Virus record (IMG/VR): IMGVR_UViG_3300014720_000001
Coordinates: 62,001 to 126,000 of that record
Strand: one strand, 5' to 3'
DNA: 64,000 bases
Shown: positions 3,163 to 45,545 of the stretch, one piece after another
How positions within the stretch are numbered: the first letter of the stretch is position 1
How the letters are laid out: each line of letters begins with the position of its first letter
Notes under the pieces: model-generated
Database searches by the model: none
Told to the model about the DNA's origin: nothing
What the model saw: the letters and a program-made list of their open reading frames with translations, nothing else
Program-made: the position numbers and the translations under genes

Positions 3163-5580
3163 TTATGCGTTAGCGATAGCGCCAAGATCAACGTCCTGCG
3201 CGGCTTCTTCCGGATACGGCTCGATGGTCTTCTGCTTGAGGAACAGAATAACGTCGCCAAGCATTTCAAACGCGTTGCGCAGCGAGTCTTCCAGTTCCGG
3301 CATGTCCGACTTGCCGTAACGTTCAGCAAACCGGTCACCGTGCCAGTAGAACATAAACAAGATACGACCAAGCTTGTCGAGACCCTTGGTTAGCTCGCCC
3401 ATGTAACGATCAACGAGCGAGTCGTCGCGCACAGCGCGGAGCATGGCGCCCACCATGGCGGTATCAAACACTTCACGCTGCCCGCTCTGAGCGGCGTCAA
3501 TGACAGAGCGTACGTCGCGCTGATCGAGCAGCGTGTTCGGGTTGTATACGCTGCGGTCGGTTTGACTGGCGCTCATACCCGGGACAGGCACGCCAACGTC
3601 GATACCGAGCTGCGTCGGAACGCTGGTACCCATGATGCTCTCACCGCCCATCACCGGGCCGGGATCGCTTGGGGCAGACGGCGCGCCATTAATCATCATC
3701 GGACCGCCGTACGGGTCGGCATACTTCACGCGGCATTGAAACTTGCGTTTGGCGGCAGCTTGTTTCAGGATCTCGCGGGCTGCTTCTTCGCGCAGGCCGT
3801 GATGCTCAACAAGTGTTACAAGCGCTTTGATAGGCGTTAGCGCTGATTCTTTGTTAAGTGTTGGGTTGATGGACACGGTTGTTCCGGTGTGATAAACCGT
3901 CAACGACGCGGTCTTCTGCATTAGTGCTAGTTGTGCGTCGACAAGGTTGCCGGGCATCAGGGCCGGCGGATCGCTCTCGCCGCAACCACACGCGCCCTGA
4001 TCTTCTGCAGTTTCGGCGTCGTCTTCGCCCTTGGTGACCTTGAGCAGCTTGAACCCTTCCGGCACGTAGATGTCACCCATACTCGCGCGCAGGCTGGAGC
4101 CCTTCTTACCGTTGAGGTGGATACGCACGCCATCGCGGTATTTGTCGTAGTTCAGTGGGTCCGTGTAGCAGCAGGCGCCGATAGAGCCCTTGGGCGGATA
4201 CTTCGAGTGATCTTCGAGGTGCACTTCGTAAATCGTGCTGTCTTCGCTGTTACCGTACTCCTTGATCACGCGGAAAGGCGCTGTGGTGTCGCCGCGCTTG
4301 CTGAGGGCGATATAACGGGCGTCCTTGCTCGGTACGCTGTTGGCGTCCGGCAGGCCGTCAAACCACTTGTCAAACTCTTCCCCCTCGATCCGGGCCAACG
4401 CAAAAACTTGGTCGGCGCGGGTGTTGAGCCAGTTACGCGCACCGTCGACGCGCACGACCGTGATGAAGTTCTCGCGCTTGGCGGCGCCTTGCGGATGGAC
4501 AGCCACGTAACAACGCTCAATGTTGCCCGGCTTGACCAGAATCTCGTACAGGCCGCTTTCGGTCGGGTTGAACAGCTTCTTTTCAACCTGAATGTGGTAC
4601 GGCACCGAAACGTTATCGCGGTCACGCTCGTCTTGAATTAACACGCCGTCGCGCAGAAGCTTTTCCTGATCTTCTTCGCTGTGGCCGACCGGCGCCTTGG
4701 TCTGAATCGTGACGTCATACGTGATAACCGTCAGGCCCTTAACAGACGCCGGTTCCTTGGGCGCTTCGGACAGCACACTAGCAATCTTGGTGCTGGCGGC
4801 AACTTCGCGAGCCGCGGCTTCGGCGATGGCTTGCTTCACGATATCTAAACCGTGAAACTCGTCGAGAGCGGCGGCGAGCTGTGGGGCGTGTTTGCACGTG
4901 TTAATAAGCGTGCCGATCACTTCGCGCCCAGCCTGCTTTAAAAACGTCTGCAGATCCAGCGCTTCGCCCATCTCTTTGAACGCCTGCGCAGTATTTAACG
5001 TGGCGCTCTTGGCGAGGGCCGGCATAGCAGCCGTCATCATCTCTTTGAGCGTCGGCTGAGCTGAGCCGAACTTGGCCGGGCTGCGCGAAAGCTGTGTAAA
5101 GTCGGGCTGGCGCTGGCCTAAGCCCGACAGGTTGCGCTGCACGCCGCTGCCCAGAATGTTGGGCTTGCGGTTAATCAAGTAGTTAATCCAGTTTTCCTTG
5201 AGCGGCACGAACATGTCCTGATTCTTGATGTACAGGAGTTCGTGGCCCTTGAGGTCGCCGTTCAGGAAAAACACCGGCGCATACAGCCAGTTTGAACCGA
5301 CCTTAAACGCAAACACGCCGACCGCTTTGGTGTTTTCCCGGTTGCGGTCGAGGAGCTGGAAGCCGATTTCGTGGTCGAGCAGCTTGGGAGCCGAATCGCG
5401 CAGATAGGCGTGCGCCAGATTGCTAAACGACTGCTCGAAGGAAGTGTCGTCGCCTTTGCCGCCTAGATCGGCGTATTTGGTCTGAGTGCGGTCATACGAC
5501 TTCAGCACATTCAGCCAATGCTTAACAGACGACTCTTTCGCTTTTTTGTTATACACGGCCAGCCTCCATGCTGCGCTCAA
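3163..5580 (-). CDS. Large hypothetical protein, probable virion protein with many K-x-A motifs
   Basis: 805-aa ORF with TKYA, AKSA, LKQA, TKIA, QKTA, KESA and VKYA motifs. Confidence 0.75.
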   Translation of the reverse strand: MSAAWRLAVYNKKAKESSVKHWLNVLKSYDRTQTKYADLGGKGDDTSFEQSFSNLAHAYLRDSAPKLLDHEIGFQLLDRNRENTKAVGVFAFKVGSNWLYAPVFFLNGDLKGHELLYIKNQDMFVPLKENWINYLINRKPNILGSGVQRNLSGLGQRQPDFTQLSRSPAKFGSAQPTLKEMMTAAMPALAKSATLNTAQAFKEMGEALDLQTFLKQAGREVIGTLINTCKHAPQLAAALDEFHGLDIVKQAIAEAAAREVAASTKIASVLSEAPKEPASVKGLTVITYDVTIQTKAPVGHSEEDQEKLLRDGVLIQDERDRDNVSVPYHIQVEKKLFNPTESGLYEILVKPGNIERCYVAVHPQGAAKRENFITVVRVDGARNWLNTRADQVFALARIEGEEFDKWFDGLPDANSVPSKDARYIALSKRGDTTAPFRVIKEYGNSEDSTIYEVHLEDHSKYPPKGSIGACCYTDPLNYDKYRDGVRIHLNGKKGSSLRASMGDIYVPEGFKLLKVTKGEDDAETAEDQGACGCGESDPPALMPGNLVDAQLALMQKTASLTVYHTGTTVSINPTLNKESALTPIKALVTLVEHHGLREEAAREILKQAAAKRKFQCRVKYADPYGGPMMINGAPSAPSDPGPVMGGESIMGTSVPTQLGIDVGVPVPGMSASQTDRSVYNPNTLLDQRDVRSVIDAAQSGQREVFDTAMVGAMLRAVRDDSLVDRYMGELTKGLDKLGRILFMFYWHGDRFAERYGKSDMPELEDSLRNAFEMLGDVILFLKQKTIEPYPEEAAQDVDLGAIANA

Positions 5581-5637: not shown

Positions 5638-7518
5638 TCACGGCTTCCACCCGCTTGTTGTGCCGATGACGCCAAACTGCTCGCCCTGCGCTAATGCCGG
5701 CACATAACTACTGCCAGCTGTATCGCTACTTAAGCCGCGCTGGACGCTATTCATCAGCCCTTTTTCCTGATAGGACCCCAACATTCGAGTCATCCAGTCG
5801 GGGTCGTTTGAAATGTTTGCCATACCCCGTACCATCTCCGGCTGAAACGGTGGCGGCTCTTTATGCGCCTGTACTGTTTTCACGCCGTATTTATTCAAGT
5901 TACTGAGCACGTTTTTACCGATCTTCGTGCCAATTGAGTAGTGCAGTACGGGTTTTTCTAGATAATGTCCGGAAAGCGAGCTAGGTGCGGCAGCTACACT
6001 TCCCTCGCGCGGAGTCCAGTTGCGCTCGATTGCGGAGTACGGCACAACGTCGTCAGGCACGTAATCGCCGTACTCGTCCGTCAGGCGCACGTGATTTACA
6101 AGTCCGCGCGCCAGTAGCTCGATGTTGCGCCGATGGGCTGTAATTCCGCTGTTACCCATTACCTGCCGCATGGCTTGCACAAAGTAGCGCCGGCCTTCGC
6201 CGATTCCTTTGTGCCTGACAATTTCTGAAGGATTTGGCATACCGTCTGATAGAACGTCGCCAGCTTCCAGCTCGTCGCCTTTTTTAATAGAAAGCGCGCG
6301 CTCGGTCGGGACGTAGTGGTCTTGTCCGTTAATTTGGACATAGTGCCCGCCTTGGGGAGCCGGGCGAATTTCTTGTACGCGGCCGTCGATTTGAGCGTGC
6401 GCGGCCCCGTCTGGATATTTTTTTGGCACCTGCACGAGCGCGTTGAGAGCTTTAAACCCCGAAATCGCCCCCGCGCCGCCGACACCGCCCGAGTGTTTCG
6501 AGCTGATCTGGCTTTGCGTGACGGGCTCGGACAGGGCTTGCGCCGCTGCGATGCCCACATAATCGCCAACAGGCGGTAAACGCCCTTTCTCTCGATAGCC
6601 GACGTCTCTTGCATAAACTCCGCCGTCTCCGGGACCGCCTACAATTGGGCTACGAACTAAAATATCTTTAGCGCCACTTTCTTTCAGGTCGCGCAGAATT
6701 TTGGGCGTTAATATCGTGTTTCGCTTGTACGGCCCCACCGCGCGCGCCAGTAACGCGCCTTCATTGTCGGGGTCATCTACGTCGGTCGGGTAGCCGCGTT
6801 CTTCTGCGGCCATACGGCGCTCTTCGTCGGTGTCGTCGTCATCGTCGGCTGTGACCAACAAACGGTGCGTCATCTGCGCCAACTGCTTGCCGTAGAAACC
6901 AGCGTCGGCCGTCGCGGTCTTCAGGTCGATCACGCCTTTACGGGTACCGAACGCGCCGGCAAAGTACTCCACCGGGCGTAAACCTTGGCTGTAACCGCGC
7001 AACACCGGAATTGGAATCGGTTCGCCGCGGTGATCTAGGTACTGCATGTCGGCGCCGAGAATTGAATTCAACTGAAACTTGTTGCCGACGCCAGACCCGG
7101 CGATTTGATGGACGAGGGGGTTATCCTGCCCTTCCGCTTCTTTGTAGACCTTGTCGAGAAGTTCTTGCTGGGCTGTTTGAGCAAGTTCAAGCAGTTTGAC
7201 GTTGCGTTGCTTTTCGTCGAGCCGTCTGTCGGCAAAAATGTCGCGCATCTGGTTTTGTACGCGCAACTGAACGTGCCGAGCCGCCAGCGTCGGTTTGATA
7301 TCTTTAAGCCCGAACGACAGGCCGTTAGTCGTGTACCCAGCATCACGGCCAATATCGTGCAACCGCTTCATAACCTCGCGATACTTTTCCGGGTGGGTTT
7401 TCGCCAGCTCGGTTGCGAGGCCCGACATTGTCTTCTTAGTTAAAACGCGGTCATAGTCGCGCATTTCTGGCGGCAGTGCTTCGTTTACCAGAAGTTGACC
7501 GAGCGTCGTTTTGAGCAT
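5638..7518 (-). CDS. rpoC: DNA-directed RNA polymerase beta' subunit, C-terminal half
   Basis: Begins TTLGQ (cf. E. coli TTVGR). Bridge helix GLRPVEYFAGAFGTRKGVIDLKTATADAGFYGKQL; trigger-loop region AAAQALSEPVTQSQISSKHSGG; RRNIELLARGL-like C-terminal motif. Confidence 0.92.
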   Translation of the reverse strand: MLKTTLGQLLVNEALPPEMRDYDRVLTKKTMSGLATELAKTHPEKYREVMKRLHDIGRDAGYTTNGLSFGLKDIKPTLAARHVQLRVQNQMRDIFADRRLDEKQRNVKLLELAQTAQQELLDKVYKEAEGQDNPLVHQIAGSGVGNKFQLNSILGADMQYLDHRGEPIPIPVLRGYSQGLRPVEYFAGAFGTRKGVIDLKTATADAGFYGKQLAQMTHRLLVTADDDDDTDEERRMAAEERGYPTDVDDPDNEGALLARAVGPYKRNTILTPKILRDLKESGAKDILVRSPIVGGPGDGGVYARDVGYREKGRLPPVGDYVGIAAAQALSEPVTQSQISSKHSGGVGGAGAISGFKALNALVQVPKKYPDGAAHAQIDGRVQEIRPAPQGGHYVQINGQDHYVPTERALSIKKGDELEAGDVLSDGMPNPSEIVRHKGIGEGRRYFVQAMRQVMGNSGITAHRRNIELLARGLVNHVRLTDEYGDYVPDDVVPYSAIERNWTPREGSVAAAPSSLSGHYLEKPVLHYSIGTKIGKNVLSNLNKYGVKTVQAHKEPPPFQPEMVRGMANISNDPDWMTRMLGSYQEKGLMNSVQRGLSSDTAGSSYVPALAQGEQFGVIGTTSGWKP

Positions 7519-7519
7519 G

Positions 7520-7759
7520 TCACGGCGTCCACACTATGTTCTGCATCGACTTAGGTTGAAAGTCAGAGACAACTACTGTCTTTTCGATGCCGAGCGCACG
7601 CAACATAGGGTGAAAGTCTTTTTCACCTACAGTTGAATACACGATGGCTTCGTCAACCTGAATGGCCACAAAAAGCGGGTTGCCTTTGTCGTCTTCAACA
7701 ACAACGCTGTGCGCTTTTTGATCTGTCGGCTGCAGGCTGTGCTGCGTTTTAACCCGCAT
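7520..7759 (-). CDS. Small hypothetical protein between the RNAP genes
   Basis: 79 aa from MRVKTQH (ATG at 7757-7759); its stop lies 1 nt from the rpoC-C start. Confidence 0.6.
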   Translation of the reverse strand: MRVKTQHSLQPTDQKAHSVVVEDDKGNPLFVAIQVDEAIVYSTVGEKDFHPMLRALGIEKTVVVSDFQPKSMQNIVWTP

Positions 7760-8480
7760 TGTCCGCAATACTCCGAAGCATGGCTGCGATCGCGTTCGCC
7801 TTGATCTGCGTTGCTGTCGGAGCGTTTGGGTCTTGATAGCTGGGCCCAAACGGACGCCCGATCGACGCGGCCGCCTTCTCGGAACGGTCCCACCACGCGG
7901 CTGCCTTCGACGGGTCGGCTTCGGGCGGGGCGGCGTTCGGGGGCATGGGTCCGCCCGGAGGCGTCGGACCGCCCGGAGGTTGCATGCCGCCCTGCGCGTT
8001 CGGGTCTTGCGGCGGCGGCGCCATCGGGCCGCCCGGAAGCGCGGTTTCAGCCGGCGGGGCGCCAGTTGTGCCCGGCGGCAGCACCAGCGACTCGGGCGGC
8101 ACCTGAACGCCCATCGCATTCATAATGGCCGTGAGCTGCTGCTGCATGTTGTACAGCCGGTAGTCAAGCATCTGCATCATCTGCTCGGGCTTGAGCTTTT
8201 GCTGCGCGCCGGCAGGAGCTGCGCCCGGAGCGGCGGGTGCGGCGGGCGCTGCGGGAGGTGCAGCGGGAGGCGCCATTCCCATAGCCGCTGGATCCACTGG
8301 CGGTGCAGCTGCTGCAGCGACAGCAGACGGATCGGCCGGCGGTACAGCCCCCATGGCGGCTGGGTCAACCGGCGGAGCACCACCAGCAGCAGCGGGATCC
8401 ACCGCCGCTCCGGGCACTAATGCAGATTTTTCAAAGCGCGCTTTCGCGAGCGCGATAAGTTCGGGGTTGACCGTGAACAT
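7749..8480 (-). CDS. Pro/Ala-rich low-complexity protein
   Basis: 243-aa ORF with PPVDPAAMG repeats and an EKSA motif near the N-terminus; SD-like GGAGG upstream. Confidence 0.75.
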   Translation of the reverse strand: MFTVNPELIALAKARFEKSALVPGAAVDPAAAGGAPPVDPAAMGAVPPADPSAVAAAAAPPVDPAAMGMAPPAAPPAAPAAPAAPGAAPAGAQQKLKPEQMMQMLDYRLYNMQQQLTAIMNAMGVQVPPESLVLPPGTTGAPPAETALPGGPMAPPPQDPNAQGGMQPPGGPTPPGGPMPPNAAPPEADPSKAAAWWDRSEKAAASIGRPFGPSYQDPNAPTATQIKANAIAAMLRSIADNAG

Positions 8481-8500
8481 ACGACCTCCGTAGGTAAGAA

Positions 8501-11500
8501 TTACTTATTATCTTCCACAATATGCACCGGGGTGTCTACTTCAATTTCGCCGCGCCGGTACGCCTGCACGGCATCCTGCTTGCTACGAAACACCCGCGGT
8601 TTAGACTTTTTGTTAATCCGGCTCGACGCCAAGTATAGCCCGGTTTGGTAATCCTTGTTCGGCACGTAGTGCGCCCGGAACGTCGAGGCGGCAAACAAGT
8701 TCTTGCTCGGCAGCATCTTTTCGACGGCTTCTTGCGCGGCGTCGTCCGTGCTTGGCACGTGGTACTGCATGGCGTCGCCGTCGAAGTCGGCACCAAACCC
8801 CTTGGTGATTACGGGGTTTACTTCCATGACTTTGTTCTTAGTTAACTTGGGGTAGAACGCCATCATGCCGTAACGATGGAGTACCGGCGCGCGGTTAATC
8901 ACAATTGGGCGCGACGACATCTGCTTGTTTAACTCAGCCGCGGCTTCTTTGTTCTTGTCTTCTACCGCCTGCATAGCCTGCATGCGGGGAAGACCGCGGC
9001 GGACCAACCCGCGGACAACGAACGGTTTGTAAATATCCCACGCTTTCTCTTCCGGCAGCGCGACTTCGTCCATGTCCAAATCGGGATTCGGCGTGATCAC
9101 CGCGCGGCCGACGAGATCTACCGTCGAGCTGAGCAGCTTGCGCTGAACTGTGCCGTACTTGGGAGAGTTCCCAAACACGTGCCGCAAGAAACCCTTGACG
9201 TTGCGCTCGACGTTTTTGGGTTGTTGCGGTTCACCTAAGCCAGTCACCGCCTTCATCGAGTCGTACACACTCAGCCGCTCGTCGCCGTAATCTGCCAGCG
9301 CGCCCGATGCGTCTTTAAGCGTGTCGTTGGCGTCGAGCAATTCTTTGTACAAATAGTTTGCGTCAGCAACGAGCGGAAGCTTTTTGTTACCCATCGTGCT
9401 GACCGGGCGGAACATGGGTGGCAGGACCGGGACTTTACTAATCATCCAGTCCTTGGGGTGCACACCGGTTGTTTCGGCGCTCTTTAAAAAACCAAGCCGA
9501 CGCACTGCAGCATCGCGCAGGGTTTTACGCCCTGATTTAATATCTTCGCGCGCCTGCTCAATGGCTTTTGGTAAGTTAATGCGTTCCAGCGCGGCTTTGA
9601 TCGCCGTCGGTCCGGTTTTGTCGCCCAGCTGTTCACGCCCGGCCAGTATGCCTCGAAACTGCTTCTCCGTTAGGCCCAGCACGCGGCGGATCGGGTCTTC
9701 CATAACGGGGTTGGGCAGCGGCTCGTGCAGCGTGATCTTGCTCCACCGGTTACCGCCGTGACCACCTGTTAATGTTTCATCAAACAACCCACCAGCAATA
9801 GGTTTGAGGCGGCCCTTCCAGTCAACAGTTTCAGAACTCTTTAACTCGCGTGCGCCAGCCAGTTCATCGACGTCCTTGTCCGTCATGGCCATCAGATTTG
9901 AACGCGTACCTTTGCGCACAACGTTAATCCCAGACGCGCGAAGTTGATTTACAAACTTCTCGTAGACGTGCGGCACCTTGGGCAGCGGCGGTGTATACCC
10001 AGCCATGAACTGCGACCAGTATTCGGGATTGGCCTGCCCGCGCACCATTTTGGCGTCACGAATAACTTTGCCGGCCCCGTGCGACAGTAGCGCGCCGAGA
10101 TCGAGCATGCCGACGCGCTTAGCGCCCTCGCTGCCGCCCTTGGCCGGCGTGCCTTCAGCGGTATACGCGCCCATCGAGCGACCCTGCGCCTTCGACTCGC
10201 TGGTGTGGTGCAGTTTCATGAAAAACCGGCTGCCCGTCAGGACGCCGCCGATTTTGCGGCCGGTCTCTGGGTCGATAACGTCTTCGGTATCTGATAGCCC
10301 GTGCTTGGCCAGCTCTTTCTGCGCAAACTCAATCAAGTCGTTTTTGTTATCAAAGTCCTTGAGCTTGTACGGCGAACCGGTTTTCATCGCCACTTTACCC
10401 AGCGCAGCTTCGATCACCTGCGCGGGGTTAATGCGGCTGATTAGACCCAGCGGCGAGACAAGCACTTCAAACGGATTGCCGTCGCGGTCCTTGGGCATCT
10501 GGTCGTCCGGGACGATCTCTGCCACGACGCCCTTGTCGCCGAAACGCCCGGTGAGCTTATCGCCGACGTCCATGGGCGCTTGGTTTTTAACAACGACGCT
10601 CACGCCCTTTTTGGTGTGCATGACATCGGTTACAACCCCGGGCGCATGATGATCCCACGTGATCGTTTCGTTAGTGAAGCTGCCGGCACGCCCGCGATGC
10701 ACCTTGCCGTATACCGTGTCTTTTTTCTTTGCCACAAGCACGAGTGGATCGCCAAATTTAACCTCGGTACCTTTTTTAATCGCACCGTCGTCGTCAAACT
10801 TGTCGAGGTACTTTTTGTCGTACTCGGTCGGGAACAAACTCACGAACGCCTTCTTGCCAACGTGAGTGTTGTCGTCCCACTCGGCTTCGTGCTGATACAT
10901 GTGCTCAGACGTCAGCCGTTTGGATGCAGATTCAGAAATCACTACGGCGTCTTCGTAGTTTTTGCCGCGAAAAGGCAGATAAGCCGTGCGCAAGTTAAGT
11001 CCAAGAGCCGCGCTACCGTTTTGATCGGTAAAATTTGAGCGGGCTAACAACTGCCCCGGATTCACTACGTCGCCCGGTTTTACAAGCGGCGTCTGATGTA
11101 AGAACGTCTTACGGTTGTACGGCATCTCGTTGTACAGATCGATCGTCTTTTTGTTGCCGTCTTTGTCGCGCAGCACGATACCGTCCGGCGTAACATCAAC
11201 AACTTGCGCCCGCTCGGTGGCCCGCGTGGCGCCTAATTTCTCGCCCATTTCGTCTTCGTGCGACATGCTCTCGTCGTCAGCTTTGGCGGACTGCAGCAGC
11301 GGCGCCTCAGCGTTTACGAGCGGAAGCGCCTGCGTAAACATTCGACTACCCATGATCACGCGATGACCTTTGATCATGGACTTGATCGGCACCATGTTGG
11401 ACAGCGTCGAGAACGTTGTGTCCATGTTTGGCAGGCTGAACTGCGCTTCTTTTCGCGGCACGTACTTGAGCTTGCCGTTTACAAGCGCGGCTACGACAGG

Positions 11501-12919
11501 TAACCCGTTGTCTTCTTCGCCCGGAAACACGAGCGGGGTATCAGATAACTCTTGCGGCGTCTTGTACACCTTCTCGCCGGTTTTCATATCTACAACAGGC
11601 GTATAGACCTTGCCGTCCGCGCCTTTCATAGCGCCGCGGGCAAACCGCATGTCGACGCCCACTTTTCCAGACTCGGGCGTGCGGAGGTAGTCGATAAAGC
11701 CGAGATGGCTGGGTTGCACAGAACGCGACTCAGCGGGCACGGCGTCGAGCGAGCCGATGCCGCCCTCGCCCATGCGCGTTACGCGGGTCTGGTGGTCAAA
11801 GATCTCGGCCGGGTTGATCTCTTCTAAGCTCGACCCCAGCCCGCTGCCGATCAACGCCGCAGAAATAGCTTTGTCGAATACGCCGGACGGAATGTGGTCA
11901 ATCGACTTTTTAGCCGTGGCTTTCCAGAGCAGTTTATTTAGTGCTTGCCGATCTTTAGTAAACCGCTCAGCAATAAGGTCTTCCGGGCCGACAACTGACT
12001 GGTACACCATGTTGTCGCGGTCGTCGCTATCGGCCTCGCGGCGATTCACTGCGATTAATTTCTTAGTGATCGCCAGAATCGTCTCCGGCGTCATGTTCTT
12101 GTATTCAGACCCAAGCGTGCGGCGGGTAACTTCGGGGTCAAGTTCAGTCTTGGCAAACTCCGCGGCAATAGCCTGCGCTTTCGCAATCGGATCAGCGCCG
12201 GCAACCTGTTTATTCACCAGCCGGGCATAGATCTTGTCCATCGTGCCCGCGTCGCCCTTCTCCATGTTGACCGCGGTGATCTCGTTGCCCCACGCCGAGC
12301 GGATGTCCTGATCTGACACGCCCATCGACTTGAGCAGCGGCATGAGCGGAATCTGCGCCTGCCCAATGCTAATCTTGAACACGCCGGTTTTGGGGTCGAG
12401 GAAGTACCGATGCGAACGGCCTTTGCCCGGCAGCGTGTTTACGTGCGCTTCAATCTCGCCGTTGTCTTTCTCGCGGGTAAAAACGCCGGGGCGCAACCGC
12501 ATCTGGTGCGCAAGTGTGTACTCCACGCCCCCGTTTACGAACGTGCCGGAGTCGGTGAGATAGGGCACGTGCGCAATCGTGGCGCGCCGCTGGCCGACGG
12601 GCTGGCCGGTTTTGTTATCTGTAAGCGTCCACGTACCCTGCAGCCGCCGGGCAAGTGTCCCGCGGGAAAGGACAGCTTTCTTCTGATCTGCCCTTGTGAA
12701 ACGTTCGGGCCCCGTGTACCCGACGTCTTGAAGTTGCAGCGTATACAGGTCGTTCTGCAGCGGTTTAAGACCTTGCGCGCTGGTGAGCGCTTGGTTGAAG
12801 ATGTTGTCGCGCATCACACCAACGTCGCCGAACGAACGCATCGTCGGCGCAGCTGACTGCGCAGCTGACTGCGCAGACAACGACGGCGTCGTTTTAAGCG
12901 GTGGCAACTCGGGGGTCAT
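8501..12919 (-). CDS. rpoB: RNA polymerase beta subunit fused to the N-terminal half of beta'
   Basis: Beta motifs VPYLTDSGTFVNGGVEY, GDKLTGRFGDKGVV, KLHHTSESKAQGRS, GMLDLGALLSHGA. After about 9920 come beta' motifs GLFDETLTG, LLSSTVDLVGRAVI, NRAPVLHR and the catalytic GADFDGD (8774-8794). Confidence 0.93.
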   Translation of the reverse strand: MTPELPPLKTTPSLSAQSAAQSAAPTMRSFGDVGVMRDNIFNQALTSAQGLKPLQNDLYTLQLQDVGYTGPERFTRADQKKAVLSRGTLARRLQGTWTLTDNKTGQPVGQRRATIAHVPYLTDSGTFVNGGVEYTLAHQMRLRPGVFTREKDNGEIEAHVNTLPGKGRSHRYFLDPKTGVFKISIGQAQIPLMPLLKSMGVSDQDIRSAWGNEITAVNMEKGDAGTMDKIYARLVNKQVAGADPIAKAQAIAAEFAKTELDPEVTRRTLGSEYKNMTPETILAITKKLIAVNRREADSDDRDNMVYQSVVGPEDLIAERFTKDRQALNKLLWKATAKKSIDHIPSGVFDKAISAALIGSGLGSSLEEINPAEIFDHQTRVTRMGEGGIGSLDAVPAESRSVQPSHLGFIDYLRTPESGKVGVDMRFARGAMKGADGKVYTPVVDMKTGEKVYKTPQELSDTPLVFPGEEDNGLPVVAALVNGKLKYVPRKEAQFSLPNMDTTFSTLSNMVPIKSMIKGHRVIMGSRMFTQALPLVNAEAPLLQSAKADDESMSHEDEMGEKLGATRATERAQVVDVTPDGIVLRDKDGNKKTIDLYNEMPYNRKTFLHQTPLVKPGDVVNPGQLLARSNFTDQNGSAALGLNLRTAYLPFRGKNYEDAVVISESASKRLTSEHMYQHEAEWDDNTHVGKKAFVSLFPTEYDKKYLDKFDDDGAIKKGTEVKFGDPLVLVAKKKDTVYGKVHRGRAGSFTNETITWDHHAPGVVTDVMHTKKGVSVVVKNQAPMDVGDKLTGRFGDKGVVAEIVPDDQMPKDRDGNPFEVLVSPLGLISRINPAQVIEAALGKVAMKTGSPYKLKDFDNKNDLIEFAQKELAKHGLSDTEDVIDPETGRKIGGVLTGSRFFMKLHHTSESKAQGRSMGAYTAEGTPAKGGSEGAKRVGMLDLGALLSHGAGKVIRDAKMVRGQANPEYWSQFMAGYTPPLPKVPHVYEKFVNQLRASGINVVRKGTRSNLMAMTDKDVDELAGARELKSSETVDWKGRLKPIAGGLFDETLTGGHGGNRWSKITLHEPLPNPVMEDPIRRVLGLTEKQFRGILAGREQLGDKTGPTAIKAALERINLPKAIEQAREDIKSGRKTLRDAAVRRLGFLKSAETTGVHPKDWMISKVPVLPPMFRPVSTMGNKKLPLVADANYLYKELLDANDTLKDASGALADYGDERLSVYDSMKAVTGLGEPQQPKNVERNVKGFLRHVFGNSPKYGTVQRKLLSSTVDLVGRAVITPNPDLDMDEVALPEEKAWDIYKPFVVRGLVRRGLPRMQAMQAVEDKNKEAAAELNKQMSSRPIVINRAPVLHRYGMMAFYPKLTKNKVMEVNPVITKGFGADFDGDAMQYHVPSTDDAAQEAVEKMLPSKNLFAASTFRAHYVPNKDYQTGLYLASSRINKKSKPRVFRSKQDAVQAYRRGEIEVDTPVHIVEDNK

Positions 12920-14498: not shown

Positions 14499-14990
14499 TC
14501 AGAGGTCTCCGGGCAGAATAAGTTTCTTGGTGGGCGCGCCGACGGTAAAGTCGGGTGTTACATGCCGGCCGGTATCTTTACCCAGCGGTAAAGCACCCGG
14601 CAACGTCGATGTAAAATTAGCGCCGCTGGCCAGAGATATCTTACTCTTTCTGCCCGGGCGGTGTCGCTTAAACCACGCATCGACGGCCGGATCGTCGCGG
14701 TCGCCCTGCTCTTTTGCCTCTTTTGTCACCGCGACCATGTTTTCAATGGCCTGCTGTAACTCCACGCGGTCCGCAGAGAGCCACGCCGCTTTCGACGGAT
14801 TTTCGGCTGCCATGTGGCGCAACCGGCGGGCTTCGTCGCTAATGGCCTGCGCCCGCTGCAAGAACTCTTTGCGGGTCAGAACAAAAAATTCACCTGTCTG
14901 CTCGTCATGCAGACAGATGAAGCCATTTTGCGCGTAAAACTTGAGCCCACGATACGAATAGCATTTACCGGTCACACTGGCGGTGGACAT
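14499..14990 (-). CDS. Hypothetical protein
   Basis: 163-aa ORF in the operon. Confidence 0.65.
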   Translation of the reverse strand: MSTASVTGKCYSYRGLKFYAQNGFICLHDEQTGEFFVLTRKEFLQRAQAISDEARRLRHMAAENPSKAAWLSADRVELQQAIENMVAVTKEAKEQGDRDDPAVDAWFKRHRPGRKSKISLASGANFTSTLPGALPLGKDTGRHVTPDFTVGAPTKKLILPGDL

Positions 14991-22094: not shown

Positions 22095-22108
22095 AGCGCG
22101 CTTTCAAA

Positions 22109-22180
22109 CTGCCTGAGTAGGACTCGAACCTACAACCCCAGCATTAACAGTGCCGTGCACTACCATTGTGCTATCAGGCA
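22109..22180 (-). tRNA. trnN: tRNA-Asn(GTT)
   Basis: TGCCTGA/TCAGGCA acceptor stem; anticodon arm CGGCA-CT GTT AA-TGCTG; GTTCGAGTC T-loop; no encoded CCA. Confidence 0.95.
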
Positions 22181-22317
22181 AGGTATGTCACGGGGTCGCG
22201 CTAATTGTTGGTGTCGTCATACCTCCGACCGCGTGATGTGCCACCGCCGCATATGCTGACACAAACAGCAAGAGGCAAAATACTGCGGAAGCGCCCCACG
22301 CGGCTACGCTCAATTGT

Positions 22318-40720: not shown

Positions 40721-40750
40721 GATATACCCGGGTTTTGCCCGATATTTAGC
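40721..40750 (-). promoter_or_regulatory. Phage promoter-like motif, copy 1
   Basis: Minus strand GCTAAATATC-GGGCAAAACC-CGGGTATATC. Confidence 0.7.
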
Positions 40751-40776
40751 TCCGGGCTTTGATAGCTAAACAAAAG

Positions 40777-40817
40777 CCTGCAGCCCCGGGGCTTGGGCGG
40801 CACCCGGGGTCTGCAGG
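40777..40817 (-). terminator. Intrinsic terminator
   Basis: CCTGCAG...CTGCAGG hairpin followed by CTTTTGTTT on the minus strand; lies after 40832..41539. Confidence 0.6.
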
Positions 40818-40831
40818 ACTTTGTTACTGCA

Positions 40832-41539
40832 CTAGGCAGCGGCCACGGCGGCCTTGGCGCGCAGCGCCTTCACCTTCGCCTCGACGGCGGGGAGGATCCG
40901 CGCCAGCGTGCTCTCCTGCACGCCGCCCTCGAACAGCCCGTAGAGAGCGCCCGAGGTGCAACCACCGGAGACCGCGGCGAACAACAGCGCCGTGGCCTTG
41001 GTGATCGTCTCACCAGCGCCGAGGCTGGCTGCGAGGCTGCCCGTCGTGACACCGACCGCGAGGCCGACCGTCGCGCCCACGCCGATCGCAGCGGCAGCCG
41101 CGACCAGCTTGAGCATGCCGGCGTTGATGTCACTCACGTTCATGGAGCTAACCAGCGCATGAACGGCGGTCAGCGCCTTCTTGGCCCGACCGTAGGCCGC
41201 GTTGGCCATCTCCTTGACCCACGCCACCATCGCCGCCACGGCTTCCGCGAACGCGTTGTACACGCGGCCGAGGAACGCCCAGACACCGCTGGCGATCTTC
41301 TGGATCGCATCAGCGAGCGTGCTGAGCACCGAGGAGACACCGGCGCCGAGGACCGACACGGTGTCGACCGCCAGCGCGCTGGCGCGGCTCAGCAGGCTCT
41401 CGTCGGCGAGGGCCTGCTGAACGATCGCGTCGATCTCAGCGTCGGTCAGCTCGGGCTTCTTGACCCGGTTGACCTTGCCGACCTTGACCTTCGCCTTAAC
41501 GCCGCGGGTCTTGGCGGGGATCTTCTTCGTCGCACTCAT
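40832..41539 (-). CDS. Ala-rich membrane protein with a Lys-rich N-terminus
   Basis: 235 aa; AAGGAG SD; GC-rich coding sequence. Confidence 0.7.
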   Translation of the reverse strand: MSATKKIPAKTRGVKAKVKVGKVNRVKKPELTDAEIDAIVQQALADESLLSRASALAVDTVSVLGAGVSSVLSTLADAIQKIASGVWAFLGRVYNAFAEAVAAMVAWVKEMANAAYGRAKKALTAVHALVSSMNVSDINAGMLKLVAAAAAIGVGATVGLAVGVTTGSLAASLGAGETITKATALLFAAVSGGCTSGALYGLFEGGVQESTLARILPAVEAKVKALRAKAAVAAA

Positions 41540-41627
41540 CTGATCAGCTCCTTAAACATGAGGACATCGATTGCGCAGAAACCCATGCAATCCGTCTGGG
41601 GACGCCAATAACACATTGGCATCATTA

Positions 41628-41657
41628 GATATACCCGGCTTTTCGGCTTTATTTAGC
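41628..41657 (-). promoter_or_regulatory. Phage promoter-like motif, copy 2
   Basis: Minus strand GCTAAATAAA-GCCGAAAAGC-CGGGTATATC. Confidence 0.7.
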
Positions 41658-41659
41658 TA

Positions 41660-42751
41660 TCAGCCGTTATTCCGGGTTTTCACCACCATCTGCTGCCGGG
41701 AGGGCCACAATACCATCTGTTGCATTGTGTCCTCGTCGGTTGCGTCGGCCAGTAACTGCAGAGCTGTCACGGGCCGCTGCGCAATACTTTCTTTGCGCTC
41801 GTCGGTCAGGCTGTTGCGCAGCACAGCCTTGAGCGCGTCATACCGGGGATACGTCACCCATCCTTCAGCTTTGTCCGGGTTGTACTCTTCGTACTTCCTG
41901 TGGACATAGTGATTGGTTTGCACCAGCCCGTTACGTCTGGTGCGGATGGCGTCGTCATCTCCGACATGCGTTACAACAGTGTGTTCGTGGGCTTTGGAGC
42001 CGACCACGTGCGCAAAGAACGGCACGATGGTTTCATAACTCCGTAATCCCAGTACCAGACTGTTGTAACTCTTTGGCAACAGGTCGCACGCTGCTCGGAC
42101 TCCCTGTAACACGGGCCATTTAAAGAGCAGCTTGGGCGCCCGCAACCAATTAAACACACTGTCAAACAGGTTCAGCGGTTTGTAAACAACCGGAGCCTGA
42201 TTGACAGTAACCGCCCATGAATCACCCATGGCAGAGATCACGCCCACCATGCCCGCCACGCCTACAGATGTATAGGCTTGCCGACCACGATGAAAGCGAA
42301 AGATCCGCGTGTGCCGGCCAGTACTGCGCGGCACAACCCAGTCCATGTTGCGGACCAGCACGGGGGACTTGTCGACCTCGAAGCTGATGCTGGAGCACCC
42401 ACAACCGTACATCTCAGCTAGAGACGTAAAGTCATAGATGAGGTTTCCCAGCATGAGCTTACCCACAGGAACTTCTGCGTGCTTGGCAATGCACGCTAAC
42501 TCCTGTGTGTAATCTTCGCCAAACATGTCCACGATTTGGCGAAGTAACCAACCGCCGCCATTGGCCAACATGTGCACAGCCGCCATGAGCGGACCGGGCA
42601 AGTTTGGCGCCAATGTCTCCTCGATTTCTGTTTCCACGTCGTCGAGAAGGGACTGAATGGCGTCTCCGTTTTGGATAGCAAAATCAGTCCAGCGCGTATC
42701 AGCCGGCTCGTCGAGGTCGATGTCCCAGACCTTGCCTGTGTAGAGCTTCAT
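41660..42751 (-). CDS. Ntn-hydrolase (peptidase C45 / acid ceramidase-like)
   Basis: Internal nucleophile CSSI, VRNMDW, GMVGVISAM, QTNHY. Confidence 0.75.
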   Translation of the reverse strand: MKLYTGKVWDIDLDEPADTRWTDFAIQNGDAIQSLLDDVETEIEETLAPNLPGPLMAAVHMLANGGGWLLRQIVDMFGEDYTQELACIAKHAEVPVGKLMLGNLIYDFTSLAEMYGCGCSSISFEVDKSPVLVRNMDWVVPRSTGRHTRIFRFHRGRQAYTSVGVAGMVGVISAMGDSWAVTVNQAPVVYKPLNLFDSVFNWLRAPKLLFKWPVLQGVRAACDLLPKSYNSLVLGLRSYETIVPFFAHVVGSKAHEHTVVTHVGDDDAIRTRRNGLVQTNHYVHRKYEEYNPDKAEGWVTYPRYDALKAVLRNSLTDERKESIAQRPVTALQLLADATDEDTMQQMVLWPSRQQMVVKTRNNG

Positions 42752-42928
42752 CTGGGCACCTCCTCCTGTGCGCGCCAGAGAATCCTGACACGCACGGGCT
42801 TGGCGGGTATTGGCGGCACATGAAGAAGCAGACGCCGCTCAATGCGGGCAATCCGTTTTTCCACGCTGGCCATCGCTCGCTCAAACCGCTGCTCAGGCGG
42901 GACAGGGAACAGGAACAGCATGATGCGC

Positions 42929-43162
42929 TTAACCATTGCGCACCGCCTGTTCCAGCAGCTCGACACGCCTGTACAGCACGTCGAAAGACTGCGCCCGGAT
43001 TTTGTCCATCTCGACGATCTTTTCCATCAGGTCGAGCAGGCGCAGCTGGGCTTTCTCTAGCTGCGCGACCCGATTACGCAGGTCAACGATCCGTCCCTTG
43101 TCGGTCTGCGGTAGATCGACGGGGAACAGGGACCCAATGTCGGTCTCAAACATCTGACTCAT
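42929..43162 (-). CDS. Small coiled-coil protein
   Basis: 77 aa; downstream of promoter-motif copy 3. Confidence 0.55.
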   Translation of the reverse strand: MSQMFETDIGSLFPVDLPQTDKGRIVDLRNRVAQLEKAQLRLLDLMEKIVEMDKIRAQSFDVLYRRVELLEQAVRNG

Positions 43163-43235
43163 CGGTCATTCTCCTTGGCCGCGCAGAAGCGGCAGAGAGG
43201 GTTCAGAACCACCCAATACACTATGGGCGTCACTG

Positions 43236-43265
43236 AATATGACCGGAATCAGGCTTTTATTTAGC
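43236..43265 (-). promoter_or_regulatory. Phage promoter-like motif, copy 3
   Basis: Minus strand GCTAAATAAA-AGCCTGATTC-CGGTCATATT; overlaps the AK-stop of 43257..44297. Confidence 0.7.
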
Positions 43266-44297: not shown

Positions 44298-44512
44298 GGC
44301 GTAGCTCGAAAGATAGTGAACTCAGCGGGATTTCCGGATAGTTGGGGTTTGAACTAGTCGGAAAAACCTATGAGTTGGTCGGCGCTATGTGTTCCCAAGC
44401 TGAATACGCCTCATTTTGGCAGAAGGGCCGCGAGAAGAAAAGGGCGCATGGGCGTCTGGTACACTGAAATGACGTTGTTAGTGGCTTCGGGCGTTTCGAC
44501 AAGGAGGTCGCC

Positions 44513-44842
44513 ATGAAATCTCTACGGATTCTAGCGTTTAGCCTGCTGTGCGTGATCTGGGCGGGGAAGGTTTGCGCCGATACTGTGCTCATGTTCTCTG
44601 CTGAATGGTGCAAATACTGCCAGACAGCCAAAAAGGATTTACTGGAGCGTAAAGAAGAAGTAGCCGAGTGGAATGTCGCGGTTGTAGATACCGACGAGAG
44701 CCGGGACATGGTGAAAGAATACGGCGTGAAGAGCTTGCCGACGTTTATTTATCTAAATGACGAGGGCAAAGAGGTCGATCGGCTGACGGGCTACAAAGGC
44801 TATCACCGGTTGCGGCGCTGGGTTGAGAAAAACAAGCGCTGA
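44513..44842 (+). CDS. Exported thioredoxin-like protein
   Basis: WCKYC motif; cis-Pro LPTF; signal peptide; AAGGAGG SD. The only convincing plus-strand gene. Confidence 0.85.
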   Translation: MKSLRILAFSLLCVIWAGKVCADTVLMFSAEWCKYCQTAKKDLLERKEEVAEWNVAVVDTDESRDMVKEYGVKSLPTFIYLNDEGKEVDRLTGYKGYHRLRRWVEKNKR

Positions 44843-44847
44843 TAGCT

Positions 44848-44890
44848 AAAAAAAGCGCATGCAGGGTCAGGGTTGAATACCTGCATGCGC
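44848..44890 (-). terminator. Intrinsic terminator between convergent genes
   Basis: 11-bp stem GCGCATGCAGG/CCTGCATGCGC with a T7 tract on the minus strand. Confidence 0.75.
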
Positions 44891-44895
44891 TCCGC

Positions 44896-45120
44896 CTACT
44901 GGGGCGCCGAGAGGGTGGTCCACTCGCCGCTGTAGGTCTGTTCCAACGGATTGACGATCCGTGGCTTCTGCTCAGGGGCGGGGCGTGGAGCCGGGGCGGG
45001 CCCAGTGACGGGCTGTTGCCAGCGCGTCATGAACTCGTCCCAGCCTTTCGGGGCTTGAGCGCTTTCCGAAACCCACCCGATGAGCGCAAGCCCACCAAGG
45101 ACCATGAGAACCGTGGTCAT
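44896..45120 (-). CDS. Small membrane-anchored protein
   Basis: 74 aa; N-terminal hydrophobic segment; downstream of promoter-motif copy 4. Confidence 0.6.
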   Translation of the reverse strand: MTTVLMVLGGLALIGWVSESAQAPKGWDEFMTRWQQPVTGPAPAPRPAPEQKPRIVNPLEQTYSGEWTTLSAPQ

Positions 45121-45539: not shown

Positions 45540-45545
45540 ATAGAG

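What the first reader, a model, noticed from the sequence alone, without database searches (positions are those of the whole stretch)
5638..12919. Re-partitioned phage RNA polymerase: beta fused to beta'-N, with beta'-C separate
Seen: one 1472-aa ORF runs from beta motifs through the beta C-terminus (GMLDLGALLSHGA...ASGINV, about 9920) directly into beta' motifs up to the catalytic loop. That loop reads GADFDGD rather than the canonical NADFDGD. The rest of beta' (from TTLGQ, including bridge helix and trigger loop) is a separate 626-aa gene. Known: full rpoBC fusions (Helicobacter, Wolbachia) and beta' splits (cyanobacteria, plastids) exist separately, and phage lineages with bacterial-like multi-subunit RNAPs (mReC) have been described. 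Inference: this combination puts both catalytic double-psi barrels in one chain. No alpha, omega or sigma gene is visible in the window, and the position among K-x-A virion-type genes suggests a packaged enzyme.
Basis: partly seen in the sequence, partly recalled or inferred. Interest (0 to 1): 0.8.

Follow-up and report, generated by a model that had tools for sequence, protein, structure and literature searches.

The report
Phage RNA polymerase with re-cut subunits
A 205-kb lake-water phage encodes a bacterial-type RNA polymerase whose two big subunits are re-cut into one fused chain (all of beta plus the first 40% of beta') and one separate chain (the rest of beta'); this real but so far unremarked layout is shared by a very large group of uncultured phages and by two cultured ones.

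Summary
ORF 8501-12919(-) (1472 aa) is a complete bacterial-type beta joined by about 8 residues to beta' up to E. coli residue ~545. It carries both catalytic barrels and the loop GADFDGD. ORF 5638-7518(-) (626 aa) is the rest of beta', with bridge helix and trigger loop.

- The junction and the TAATAA stop are intact in independent contigs of four lake-water runs.
- All 69 informative related IMG/VR loci share the layout, as do 148 of 150 50%-identity cluster representatives, Salmonella phage Arash and Vibrio phages D69/D148/D181.
- The split lies only 12-20 residues upstream of the cyanobacterial/plastid split.
- Both chains have no cysteine, so both beta' zinc sites are gone.
- The whole genome has no alpha or omega homologue and only one RNAP set.
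- It does encode a sigma-70-family protein, outside the window.
- Virion packaging is suggested only by published Arash virion mass spectrometry.

No paper I could search describes this partition, and Arash gp206 is annotated simply as "beta". Verdict: a real, conserved, new variant of phage multisubunit RNAP, not unique to this genome. Interest 0.6.

The parts
8501..12919 (-). Fused RNAP gene (1472 aa): beta joined to the N-terminal ~40% of beta'. It ends in a double stop, TAATAA.
   Evidence: ORF. Pfam Rpb2_6/3/2 plus Rpb1_1/2. PDB phmmer. Stop context. Intact in independent contigs and in 69 of 69 related loci.
9911..12919 (-). Beta part (residues 1-1003). It is colinear with bacterial beta but lacks the E. 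coli lineage inserts SI1 and SI2. The first ~55 residues are a variable N-terminal extension. The beta barrel lysines are kept (GDK...GDKG).
   Evidence: blastp against E. coli: residues 57-206 = beta 81-220, 276-727 = beta 420-884, 756-1000 = beta 1040-1337. Cyanobacterial beta aligns over residues 61-1026 in one stretch.
9890..9910 (-). Junction of about 7-8 residues (1004-1010) between the last beta strand (GINVVRK) and the first conserved beta' strand (LMAMTD). AlphaFold2 models it as a beta-hairpin.
   Evidence: Family HMM against E. coli: beta 1304-1339 aligns to residues 967-1002 and beta' 23-64 to residues 1011-1053. Junction alignment is conserved in 23 family members. AF2 strands fall at model residues 119-124 and 127-132, pLDDT 68-90.
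8504..9889 (-). Beta'-N part (residues 1011-1472), equivalent to E. coli beta' ~20-545. It holds the clamp N-terminal region, the sigma-docking coiled-coil region and the catalytic double-psi barrel.
   Evidence: Foldseek best matches of the AF2 model are cyanobacterial gamma, plastid beta' and bacterial beta' (E ~1e-28).
9671..9763 (-). Site of the deleted N-terminal zinc ribbon of beta'. Thirty residues (1053-1083) stand in for E. coli beta' 64-160, and none of the four cysteines is present.
   Evidence: no cysteine in the whole protein. A weak colinear C. thermocellum alignment agrees.
8774..8794 (-). Catalytic loop G-ADFDGD (residues 1376-1382). The aspartate triad is intact; G replaces the canonical N.
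   Evidence: Family variation at the first position is G, N or A.
7749..8480 (-). Intervening gene 1: a 243-aa Pro/Ala-rich protein of unknown function with a GGAGG ribosome-binding site. It is conserved upstream of beta'-C in 62 of 70 related loci.
   Evidence: No Pfam, PHROG or Atlas lead.
7520..7759 (-). Intervening gene 2: a 79-aa protein of unknown function. Its TGA stop lies one base before the beta'-C ATG. It is conserved in 49 of 70 related loci.
   Evidence: The Atlas gave no informative hit.
5638..7518 (-). Beta'-C gene (626 aa), equivalent to E. coli beta' ~569 to the C-terminal region. It starts at TTLGQ and holds the bridge helix (~nt 6865-6972) and the trigger loop with its conserved His (~nt 6484-6543). 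SI3 and the second zinc site are absent.
   Evidence: Pfam Rpb1_5. PDB alignments. blastp against E. coli: residues 136-345 = beta' 722-939 and 396-498 = beta' 1180-1286. No cysteine.
3163..5580 (-). Conserved 805-aa gene just downstream of beta'-C, function unknown. It is a candidate accessory factor by synteny only.
   Evidence: Present downstream in 68 of 70 related loci. Weak similarity to Vibrio phage D69 gene 0266, which also lies downstream of beta'-C. No Pfam, PHROG or Atlas lead. AF2 model poor and no fold match.

Best explanation
These are the catalytic genes of a phage-encoded, bacterial-type multisubunit RNA polymerase. Its core is built from two polypeptides instead of beta plus beta'.

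- Chain 1 (1472 aa) is the whole beta subunit tied by about 8 residues to beta' residues ~20-545. It therefore carries both double-psi barrels, and with them the whole active centre (beta lysines plus the beta' Asp triad).
- Chain 2 (626 aa) supplies the bridge helix, the trigger loop, the jaw and the C-terminal clamp part.

The tether joins two strands that already pair in bacterial RNAP. The break lies in a surface linker that is also used as a split point by cyanobacteria, plastids and phiKZ/AR9-type phages.

Inferred, not shown: the enzyme works with the phage's own sigma-70-family factor and without alpha or omega. The covalent beta-beta'N link would take over the assembly role of the alpha dimer. 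As suggested by Arash virion proteomics, the enzyme may be carried in the virion to transcribe phage genes independently of the host polymerase.

The confidence of 0.7 applies to the statement as a whole. The identity and the two-chain layout are near certain. The alpha-independent and packaged parts are much less sure.
For: **Identity and domain order.** Pfam, PDB phmmer, E. coli mapping.

**Catalytic residues kept.** The GDK...GDKG lysines, the DFDGD triad, the bridge helix and the trigger-loop His are all present.

**Structure.** The AF2 model of residues 880-1472 (pLDDT 77.8) shows a hairpin at the junction. Its best matches are the gamma and beta' subunits.

**Sequence is real.** Contigs of four independent runs show no indels.

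**Layout conserved.**
- 69 of 69 IMG/VR loci have beta and beta'N contiguous in frame, with beta'C 860-5315 bp downstream on the same strand. The open frames are 1461-1512 aa.
- 148 of 150 50%-identity representatives end within 15 aa of the beta'N end, and 139 of 150 contain beta.
- More than 120 close clusters are 1455-1485 aa long.
- The cultured phages Arash and Vibrio D69 share the layout.

**Translated as one chain.** In-frame inteins at 15 or more sites across both halves show the ORF is read as one protein and is under strong selection.

**Other subunits.** No alpha or omega and only one beta' barrel in the complete genome. A sigma-70-family gene is present.

**Packaging hint.** Arash gp206, gp216 and gp10 are abundant in virion mass spectrometry (PMC10585845).
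Against: - No biochemical data exist for any member of this clade.
- Independence from host alpha and omega is argued only from the absence of phage homologues by Pfam. Divergent analogues could hide among the conserved unknown genes (243 aa, 79 aa, 805 aa).
- The Arash preparation was sucrose-gradient material with 116 proteins detected, including ribonucleotide reductases. Virion association is therefore not proven.
- Genes around the RNAP genes in this window have no recognisable virion annotation.
- G in place of N at the start of the catalytic loop, and Ile and Ser at the positions of E. coli trigger-loop Met932 and Arg933, may alter substrate selection in ways not assessed here.
Confidence: 0.7

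Rival explanations
1. The phage supplies only the catalytic chains. The working enzyme borrows the host alpha dimer (and perhaps omega, or host sigma), as a hybrid polymerase.
For: The chains are clearly bacterial-type and colinear with beta and beta' over their whole length. No phage alpha or omega exists. Cellular RNAPs of this type all need alpha for assembly (established knowledge; Sokolova et al. 2020, PMC7598289).
Against: PhiKZ/AR9-type phage RNAPs work without alpha or omega (PMC7598289). A virion-carried enzyme would then have to package host alpha. Loss of both zinc sites and of lineage inserts, together with the tether, points to a self-contained, streamlined enzyme. None of this was tested.
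Confidence: 0.25
2. The polymerase is a purely intracellular (middle or late) enzyme and is not packaged. Its abundance in Arash 'virion' proteomics would then reflect carry-over of a highly expressed protein.
For: The Arash authors themselves raise this possibility, and they detected 116 proteins including metabolic enzymes. The RNAP genes in this window are not flanked by recognisable structural genes. Here the portal gene is about 72 kb away, unlike in Arash.
Against: In Arash, gp206 had the highest spectral count of all proteins, above the major capsid protein. The sigma-like gp10 lies among structural genes and was also detected. That gp10-gp13 neighbourhood is conserved in this genome.
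Confidence: 0.3
3. The fusion or the split is an assembly or frameshift artefact, or the genes are decaying pseudogenes.
For: None found.
Against: Four independent runs show no indels or joints. The layout is conserved from 95% down to ~43% identity in 69 loci. The gene ends in a double stop codon, and two conserved genes lie between the pieces. Catalytic residues are intact. In-frame inteins are present.
Confidence: 0.01
4. The two beta' pieces are rejoined after translation by a split intein, giving a full beta-beta' fusion like that of Helicobacter.
For: The family is unusually rich in inteins.
Against: Beta'N ends, and beta'C begins, directly in sequence that aligns with bacterial beta'. 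Neither end carries the extra ~100-aa or ~35-aa intein halves, and neither has a Cys, Ser or Thr nucleophile context. Both proteins contain no cysteine at all.
Confidence: 0.02

Closest known systems
Salmonella phage Arash gp206 + gp216 (OQ632216) and Vibrio phages D69/D148/D181
   Same: The partition is the same: a 1525-1527-aa beta-beta'N chain and a 606-609-aa beta'C chain on the same strand with genes in between. Identity is 33% for the fused chain and 24% for beta'C. They fall in the same clade in the beta' tree (SH-aLRT 100). A sigma-like gp10 homologue is present.
   Different: They are very divergent. Their catalytic loop reads AADYDGD. In Arash the gene follows the portal gene. In D181 and D148 a homing endonuclease interrupts the gene. 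Published annotation calls gp206 'beta' and gp216 'beta'' and does not note the fusion.
mReC-type phage RNAPs (Weinheimer & Aylward 2020). Taken here as likely representatives, with membership not checked: Rhizobium phage RHph_Y65, Vibrio phage Va2, Cobetia phage Carin-5
   Same: These are phage-encoded, bacterial-like beta and beta' that are recognisable by sequence. They sit on the phage side of the beta' tree. Carin-5 has a sigma gene next to its RNAP genes.
   Different: Their beta' is unsplit (1083-1192 aa) and their beta is a separate gene. RHph_Y65 and Va2 keep NADFDGD, while Carin-5 reads NLDYDGD. The mReC selection rule required separate COG0085 and COG0086 proteins of at least 800 aa and the NADxDGD motif, which would exclude the present gene.
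Cyanobacterial gamma/beta' and plastid beta'/beta'' split
   Same: Beta' is cut after the catalytic barrel. Residues 4-11 of cyanobacterial beta', and residue 10 of plastid beta'', align with position 22 of the phage beta'C profile. Gamma and plastid beta' are the best structural matches of the beta'N model.
   Different: The phage cut is 12-20 residues further upstream, before the TTxG motif rather than after it. No SI3 insert is present. Beta is not fused to gamma in cyanobacteria. Alpha and omega are present there (established knowledge).
Natural rpoB-rpoC fusions (Helicobacter, Wolbachia) and the engineered E. coli beta::beta' tether
   Same: The beta C-terminus is joined head-to-tail to the beta' N-terminus, exploiting their proximity in the clamp (from general knowledge, not tested here).
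   Different: Those fusions carry a complete beta' and still use alpha and omega. Here beta' is truncated at about residue 545 and its remainder is a separate gene.
phiKZ/AR9-type non-canonical multisubunit RNAPs of jumbo phages
   Same: The hosts are ~200-kb phages. There is no alpha or omega. Beta' is split after the barrel at the 'cyanobacterial' site (PMC7598289). One of their two enzymes is virion-packaged.
   Different: Their beta is split into two or three pieces rather than fused. They have two paralogous sets where this genome has one. They have no recognisable sigma where this genome has one. Their sequences are far more divergent from bacterial RNAP.

Membership tests
Bacterial-type RNAP beta (RpoB) | Rpb2 domain 6 / beta double-psi barrel with the two active-site lysines, and full-length colinearity with beta | tested here: met
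   PF00562 scores 170 bits against a cut-off of 23.4. Residues 61-1026 align with cyanobacterial beta 50-1079. GDK...GDKG aligns with E. coli K1065 and K1073.
Bacterial-type RNAP beta' (RpoC) | Catalytic DxDGD triad within the NADFDGD loop | tested here: met
   ADFDGD lies at residues 1377-1382 and PF00623 scores 85.6 bits. The preceding N is replaced by G, and the family carries G, N or A at that position.
Bacterial-type RNAP beta' (RpoC) | Two zinc-binding sites (E. coli C70/72/85/88 and C814/888/895/898) | tested here: not met
   There are no cysteines in either chain. The zinc-ribbon segment is deleted. The second-site cysteines are replaced or gapped.
Bacterial-type RNAP beta' (RpoC) | Bridge helix and trigger loop, in a single polypeptide with the barrel | tested here: not met
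   The elements are present (PF04998, 86.6 bits; alignment to E. coli 722-939). They lie on a separate 626-aa chain.
mReC as operationally defined (Weinheimer & Aylward 2020) | Separate COG0085 and COG0086 proteins of at least 800 aa each, with the NADxDGD motif | tested here: not met
   The selection rule is quoted. Here one protein holds both halves, the motif is GADFDGD, and neither beta' piece is a stand-alone protein of 800 aa or more.
mReC as a clade | Branches with mReC RNAPs, apart from cellular RNAPs, in a beta/beta' tree | tested here: inconclusive
   In the beta' tree of 37 rows, the fused-split clade (100) groups with three unsplit phage beta' against 17 bacteria (100). The branches are long, and the bacteria cover only Proteobacteria, Desulfobacterota, Myxococcota, one Staphylococcus contig and one unidentified gut contig. 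No original mReC sequences were included.
Full rpoBC fusion (Helicobacter/Wolbachia type) | Complete beta and complete beta' in one polypeptide | tested here: not met
   The fused ORF stops (TAATAA) at the equivalent of E. coli beta' ~545. This end is conserved in 148 of 150 representatives.
Cyanobacterial/plastid split beta' | Split at the gamma|beta' boundary, with an SI3 insert in the trigger loop | tested here: not met
   The split is 12-20 residues upstream of the cyanobacterial one. No SI3 is present: beta'C residues 345-396 span E. coli 939-1180.
phiKZ/AR9-type jumbo-phage RNAP | Beta split into two or more chains, two paralogous enzyme sets, and no sigma homologue | tested here: not met
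   Beta is intact and fused. The genome has a single beta' barrel. A sigma-70-family gene is present.
phiKZ/AR9-type jumbo-phage RNAP | No alpha or omega homologues in the phage genome | tested here: met
   PF01000, PF01193 and PF01192 give no match at E<=1 in the complete 204.6-kb genome, while the control genomes all match.
Sigma-70 family (the 280-aa protein at G000:35826-36668, outside the window) | Regions 2, 3 and 4 | tested here: inconclusive
   Sigma70_r3 scores 38.3 bits against a cut-off of 25.3. Region 4 is only weak at 16.8 bits. Region 2 is not detected by Pfam. phmmer aligns residues 48-267 with SigA regions 2-4 at E ~2e-4.
Virion-packaged RNAP | The protein is present inside purified particles | not testable with these tools
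   The only evidence is mass spectrometry of Arash homologues, from a preparation that also contained many non-structural proteins.

The most novel reading that the evidence does not exclude
This clade's enzyme is a minimal, self-assembling two-chain bacterial-type RNAP core: cysteine- and zinc-free, with no alpha and no omega. The beta-beta'N tether replaces the alpha-dimer assembly platform. The core is packaged in the capsid together with its own sigma factor and injected to start host-independent transcription. If so, it would be a structural intermediate between canonical bacterial RNAP and the phiKZ/AR9-type enzymes, with which it shares the beta' split site.
Probability: 0.3. Interest if true: 0.8.

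Novelty: new variant of a known kind. Interest (0 to 1): 0.6.

Why it matters
**Subunit boundaries.** RNAP subunit boundaries are among the most conserved features of cellular life. Here nature has moved both of them at once, fusing beta to beta' and cutting beta' after the barrel. The result is stable across a very large, mostly freshwater phage clade.

**Assembly without alpha.** The layout offers a simple test case for how a bacterial-type polymerase can assemble and work without alpha, omega or zinc sites.

**A recurrent break point.** The beta' break point near E. coli residues 545-590 is used repeatedly, by cyanobacteria and plastids, by phiKZ/AR9-type phages, and by this clade.

**Directly testable.** A cultured member on a laboratory Salmonella strain, phage Arash, has the same layout. 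Expression, in-vitro transcription, virion proteomics and cryo-EM are therefore all feasible.

**Annotation.**
- These genes are currently labelled 'beta subunit' or 'hypothetical'.
- The mReC survey's published selection rule (separate subunits, NADxDGD motif) would exclude them.
- The diversity of phage RNAPs is therefore probably undercounted.

Tried and rejected
1. **Assembly or frameshift artefact.** Rejected by contigs of four runs and by conservation in relatives.
2. **Stand-alone beta'N genes in the family.** The short hits P0265 and P0253 lie at the edges of 1.6-1.8-kb contigs, so they are fragments.
3. **Alpha or omega analogues among the conserved neighbours.**
   - Pfam and PHROGs find nothing for the 243-aa, 79-aa, 284-aa and 805-aa proteins.
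   - The ESM Atlas gives no usable lead.
   - AF2 of the 805-aa protein is poor (pLDDT 57, pTM 0.29), and Foldseek finds nothing at E<=0.001.
4. **A C-terminal extension of beta'C as a fusion with the 805-aa protein.** In locus L059 the extension is unrelated to it and holds a P-loop kinase-like domain.
5. **Split-intein rejoining of beta'.** There are no intein halves at the ends.
6. **Promoter and terminator scan around the genes.** Nothing above chance, apart from one strong hairpin at 14889-14921(-).
7. **Literature.** Five searches and six papers read found no description of this partition. The 'moraphage' lineage (PMC12619734) is unrelated and lacks RNAP.
8. **AF2 alignment with Arash and D69 rows.** The job was rerun without those rows.
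9. **Wider bacterial sampling for the tree.** The genome-contig scan returned only the 80 loci most like E. coli, so deep placement stays open.

Full report
**1. What is in the sequence**

The window is bases 62001-126000 of a complete 204,621-bp IMG/VR virus record with direct terminal repeats. It comes from lake-water metagenomes.

In the long protein Pfam finds RNA_pol_Rpb2_6 (1e-49), Rpb2_3 and Rpb2_2, followed by Rpb1_1 and Rpb1_2 (6e-24). In the short protein it finds Rpb1_5 (3e-24).

Against PDB sequences:
- Residues ~60-1026 of the long protein align with full-length bacterial beta.
- Residues 1073-1469 align with beta' (E. coli 143-530).
- Residues 1-498 of the short protein align with M. 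tuberculosis beta' 663-1187.
- In C. thermocellum beta' numbering the two pieces cover 165-561 and 577-1083, so the cut is clean and nothing is missing.

**2. Fine mapping**

*Beta part.* blastp against E. coli RpoB and RpoC (fetched) gives residues 57-206 = beta 81-220, 276-727 = beta 420-884 and 756-1000 = beta 1040-1337. The E. coli inserts SI1 and SI2 are therefore absent.

*Junction.* A family HMM of the junction region places E. coli beta 1304-1339 on residues 967-1002, beta' 23-64 on residues 1011-1053, and beta' 160-207 on residues 1083-1129. The first beta' segment is weak on its own (E 0.02), but it is colinear and agrees with an independent phmmer alignment to C. thermocellum beta' 49-76. 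It follows that:
- The last beta strand (GINVVRK) is linked by about 8 residues to the first conserved beta' strand.
- The first ~20 residues of beta' are gone.
- About 65 residues, including the N-terminal zinc ribbon, are deleted.

The junction sequence is well conserved in 23 diverse family members.

*Active centre.*
- The catalytic loop is G1376-ADFDGD.
- The beta-barrel lysines are kept (GDK...GDKG).
- The bridge helix is present.
- The trigger-loop His is kept, while the Met and Arg before it are Ile and Ser.
- The cysteines of the second zinc site are replaced.
- Both chains contain no cysteine at all in 2,098 residues.

*Structure model.* An AlphaFold2 model of residues 880-1472 has pLDDT 77.8 and pTM 0.56. 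It puts the junction in a beta-hairpin formed by model residues 119-124 and 127-132. Its best Foldseek matches are cyanobacterial gamma, plastid beta' and bacterial beta', at E ~1e-28.

**3. The split**

Beta'C starts exactly at the conserved TTLGQ motif (E. coli TTVGR at 572).

A profile of 12 beta'C N-termini was searched against PDB. Residues 4-11 of cyanobacterial beta' (8syi_Z, 8h3v_B, 8gzg_Z) and residue 10 of plastid beta'' align with profile position 22. The phage cut therefore lies only 12-20 residues upstream of the cyanobacterial/plastid cut.

Sokolova et al. (PMC7598289) report that phiKZ/AR9-type beta' subunits are also split after the barrel, at the 'cyanobacterial' site. This surface linker is thus a recurrent break point.

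The two RNAP genes are not adjacent:
- A 243-aa Pro/Ala-rich ORF (7749-8480) and a 79-aa ORF (7520-7759) lie between them.
- The fused gene ends in TAATAA, followed by a GGAGG ribosome-binding site for the next gene.
- The 79-aa gene's TGA stop is one base from the beta'C ATG.

**4. Is it real?**

Logan contigs of four lake-water runs were laid on 7300-10300. They show no indels and no joints. The only difference is T>C at 9649 (I1091V), and it appears in all four runs. Separate contigs in three low-depth runs, and one 63.5-kb contig at depth 106, cover both the junction and the stop.

**5. How widespread?**

*Close relatives.* More than 120 clusters at 90% identity, 76-100% identical to the fused protein, are 1455-1485 aa long. 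They sit on contigs of up to ~210 kb.

*Exhaustive search with beta'N.* A search of 1.84 billion representatives gave 150 best hits, with E from 1e-185 to 1e-123.
- 148 of them end within 15 residues of the beta'N end.
- 139 contain the beta part.
- Two short ones were checked and are contig-edge fragments.

*IMG/VR loci.* In 69 of 70 loci found with beta'C, beta and beta'N are contiguous in frame, and beta'C lies 860-5315 bp downstream on the same strand. The 70th locus has no upstream sequence. The open frames are 1461-1512 aa.

*GenBank phages.* Only Salmonella phage Arash (gp206 of 1525 aa plus gp216 of 606 aa) and Vibrio phages D69/D148/D181 share the layout.

*Other phage lineages.* Rhizobium RHph_Y65, Vibrio Va2 and Cobetia Carin-5 have an unsplit beta' of 1083-1192 aa and a separate beta.

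*Tree.* In a beta' tree (37 rows, 1026 columns, LG+C20) the fused-split group is one clade that includes Arash and D69 (SH-aLRT 100). It sits with the unsplit phage beta' on the opposite side from 17 bacterial rows. The branches are long and bacterial sampling is narrow, so the deep placement is open.

*Catalytic loop.* The first residue of the loop varies within the clade between G, N and A.

**6. Other subunits**

The whole genome has no match to the alpha families (PF01000, PF01193) or the omega family (PF01192) at E<=1, while all control genomes match. It has only one beta' barrel.

It does encode a 280-aa sigma-70-family protein at G000:35826-36668(-), outside the window:
- Sigma70_r3 scores 38 bits, above its cut-off. 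Region 4 is weak and region 2 is not detected.
- phmmer aligns it with SigA regions 2-4.
- It is homologous to Arash gp10 (29% identity, 2e-19).

**7. Function**

Shown: the two genes together encode every catalytic element of a bacterial-type RNAP, and they are under strong conservation.

Inferred:
- A two-chain core in which the tether stands in for alpha-mediated assembly.
- Use of the phage sigma factor.
- Possible packaging in the virion.

For packaging, the only data are from Arash. There gp206 had the highest spectral count in purified particles (3516). gp216 (1210) and gp10 were also detected. But 116 proteins were found in all, and the authors themselves allow for carry-over (PMC10585845).

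The neighbours of the RNAP genes in this window give no Pfam or PHROG hits.

**8. Novelty**

The mReC paper does not mention fusions or splits in its phages. Its filters (separate subunits of at least 800 aa, NADxDGD motif) would exclude this gene. Reviews of jumbo-phage RNAPs from 2020, 2021 and 2026 do not describe the layout. The Arash paper labels the proteins simply beta and beta'.

Within the searchable literature the partition is therefore undescribed, although the sequences are public. I rate it a new variant of a known kind, namely phage-encoded bacterial-like multisubunit RNAP. It is not unique to this genome.

**9. Side observations**

- The fused gene is a hot spot for inteins. Of 270 family proteins, 113 are 1700 aa or longer. 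They carry 148 inserts at 15 or more sites, most often at residue ~417 and inside the catalytic loop at ~1380.
- Three of four tested inserts have Intein_splicing and/or LAGLIDADG domains.
- Beta'C also carries inserts in some loci.
- One relative has a 749-aa kinase-like extension on beta'C.

Noticed in passing
Family members P0008, P0123, P0130, P0146 and others; insertion sites mapped to window residues ~160 to ~1390 of ORF 8501-12919: The fused RNAP gene carries an unusually heavy intein load across the family. Of 270 proteins, 113 are 1700-3350 aa long. They hold 148 inserts at 15 or more sites, most often at ~417 (RTPE|SGK) and inside the catalytic loop (~1380). The termini are of the Cys...His-Asn type, and LAGLIDADG and Intein_splicing domains are present. 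The window's own copy has no intein.
   Followed up: partly
L066, L067, L069, L072, L078 (beta'C matches split into 2-3 pieces): In some relatives the beta'C gene also carries large in-frame inserts, probably inteins.
   Followed up: no
L059:11858-14104: In one relative, beta'C has a 749-aa C-terminal extension with a P-loop kinase-like domain (AAA_18/AAA_33), an acylphosphatase-like segment and DUF5661. L075 has a 293-aa extension with no Pfam match.
   Followed up: partly
window 7749-8480(-) and 7520-7759(-): Two small genes of unknown function sit between the RNAP genes: a 243-aa Pro/Ala-rich, probably disordered protein, and a 79-aa protein. They are conserved in 62 and 49 of 70 related loci. 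They may be RNAP-associated or internal virion proteins.
   Followed up: partly
window 3163-5580(-): An 805-aa protein of unknown function lies directly downstream of beta'C in 68 of 70 related loci. It has weak similarity to the gene downstream of beta'C in Vibrio phage D69. No family or fold could be assigned.
   Followed up: yes
G000:C1:35826-36668(-) (outside the window; locus L007): A sigma-70-family protein of 280 aa, homologous to Arash gp10. It lies next to a homologue of the Arash structural protein gp13.
   Followed up: partly
window 40722-46301, minus strand; also G000:14997: A promoter-like motif occurs in six copies in a 5.6-kb stretch, plus one copy elsewhere in the genome. It reads AGCTAAATA, then 11-12 nt, then CCGGGTATATCTAGT, with a -35/-10-like geometry and an 18-nt spacer. 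None of the copies lies near the RNAP genes.
   Followed up: partly
window 22108-22181 and 52317-54899, minus strand: Seven tRNA genes: Asn, Leu-TAG, Glu, Met, Val, Leu-TAA and Lys.
   Followed up: no
window 9649: All four sequencing runs read C where the window has T. This changes I1091 to V in the fused protein. The window record carries a minority or private variant at this base.
   Followed up: yes
window 12844-12881: A 12-nt tandem repeat lies in the 5' end of the fused gene and encodes the repeated SAQSAA in the variable N-terminal extension. Relatives differ over the first ~25 residues.
   Followed up: no
Vibrio phages D181 and D148 (OZ196140, OZ196545), about 144.2-149.6 kb: The fused gene matches in two pieces spanning 5.4 kb, with an annotated homing endonuclease under the match. 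The gene there is interrupted by a mobile element.
   Followed up: no
window 14889-14921, minus strand: A strong terminator-like hairpin (13 bp stem followed by a T run) lies upstream of the co-directional gene array that contains the RNAP genes.
   Followed up: no
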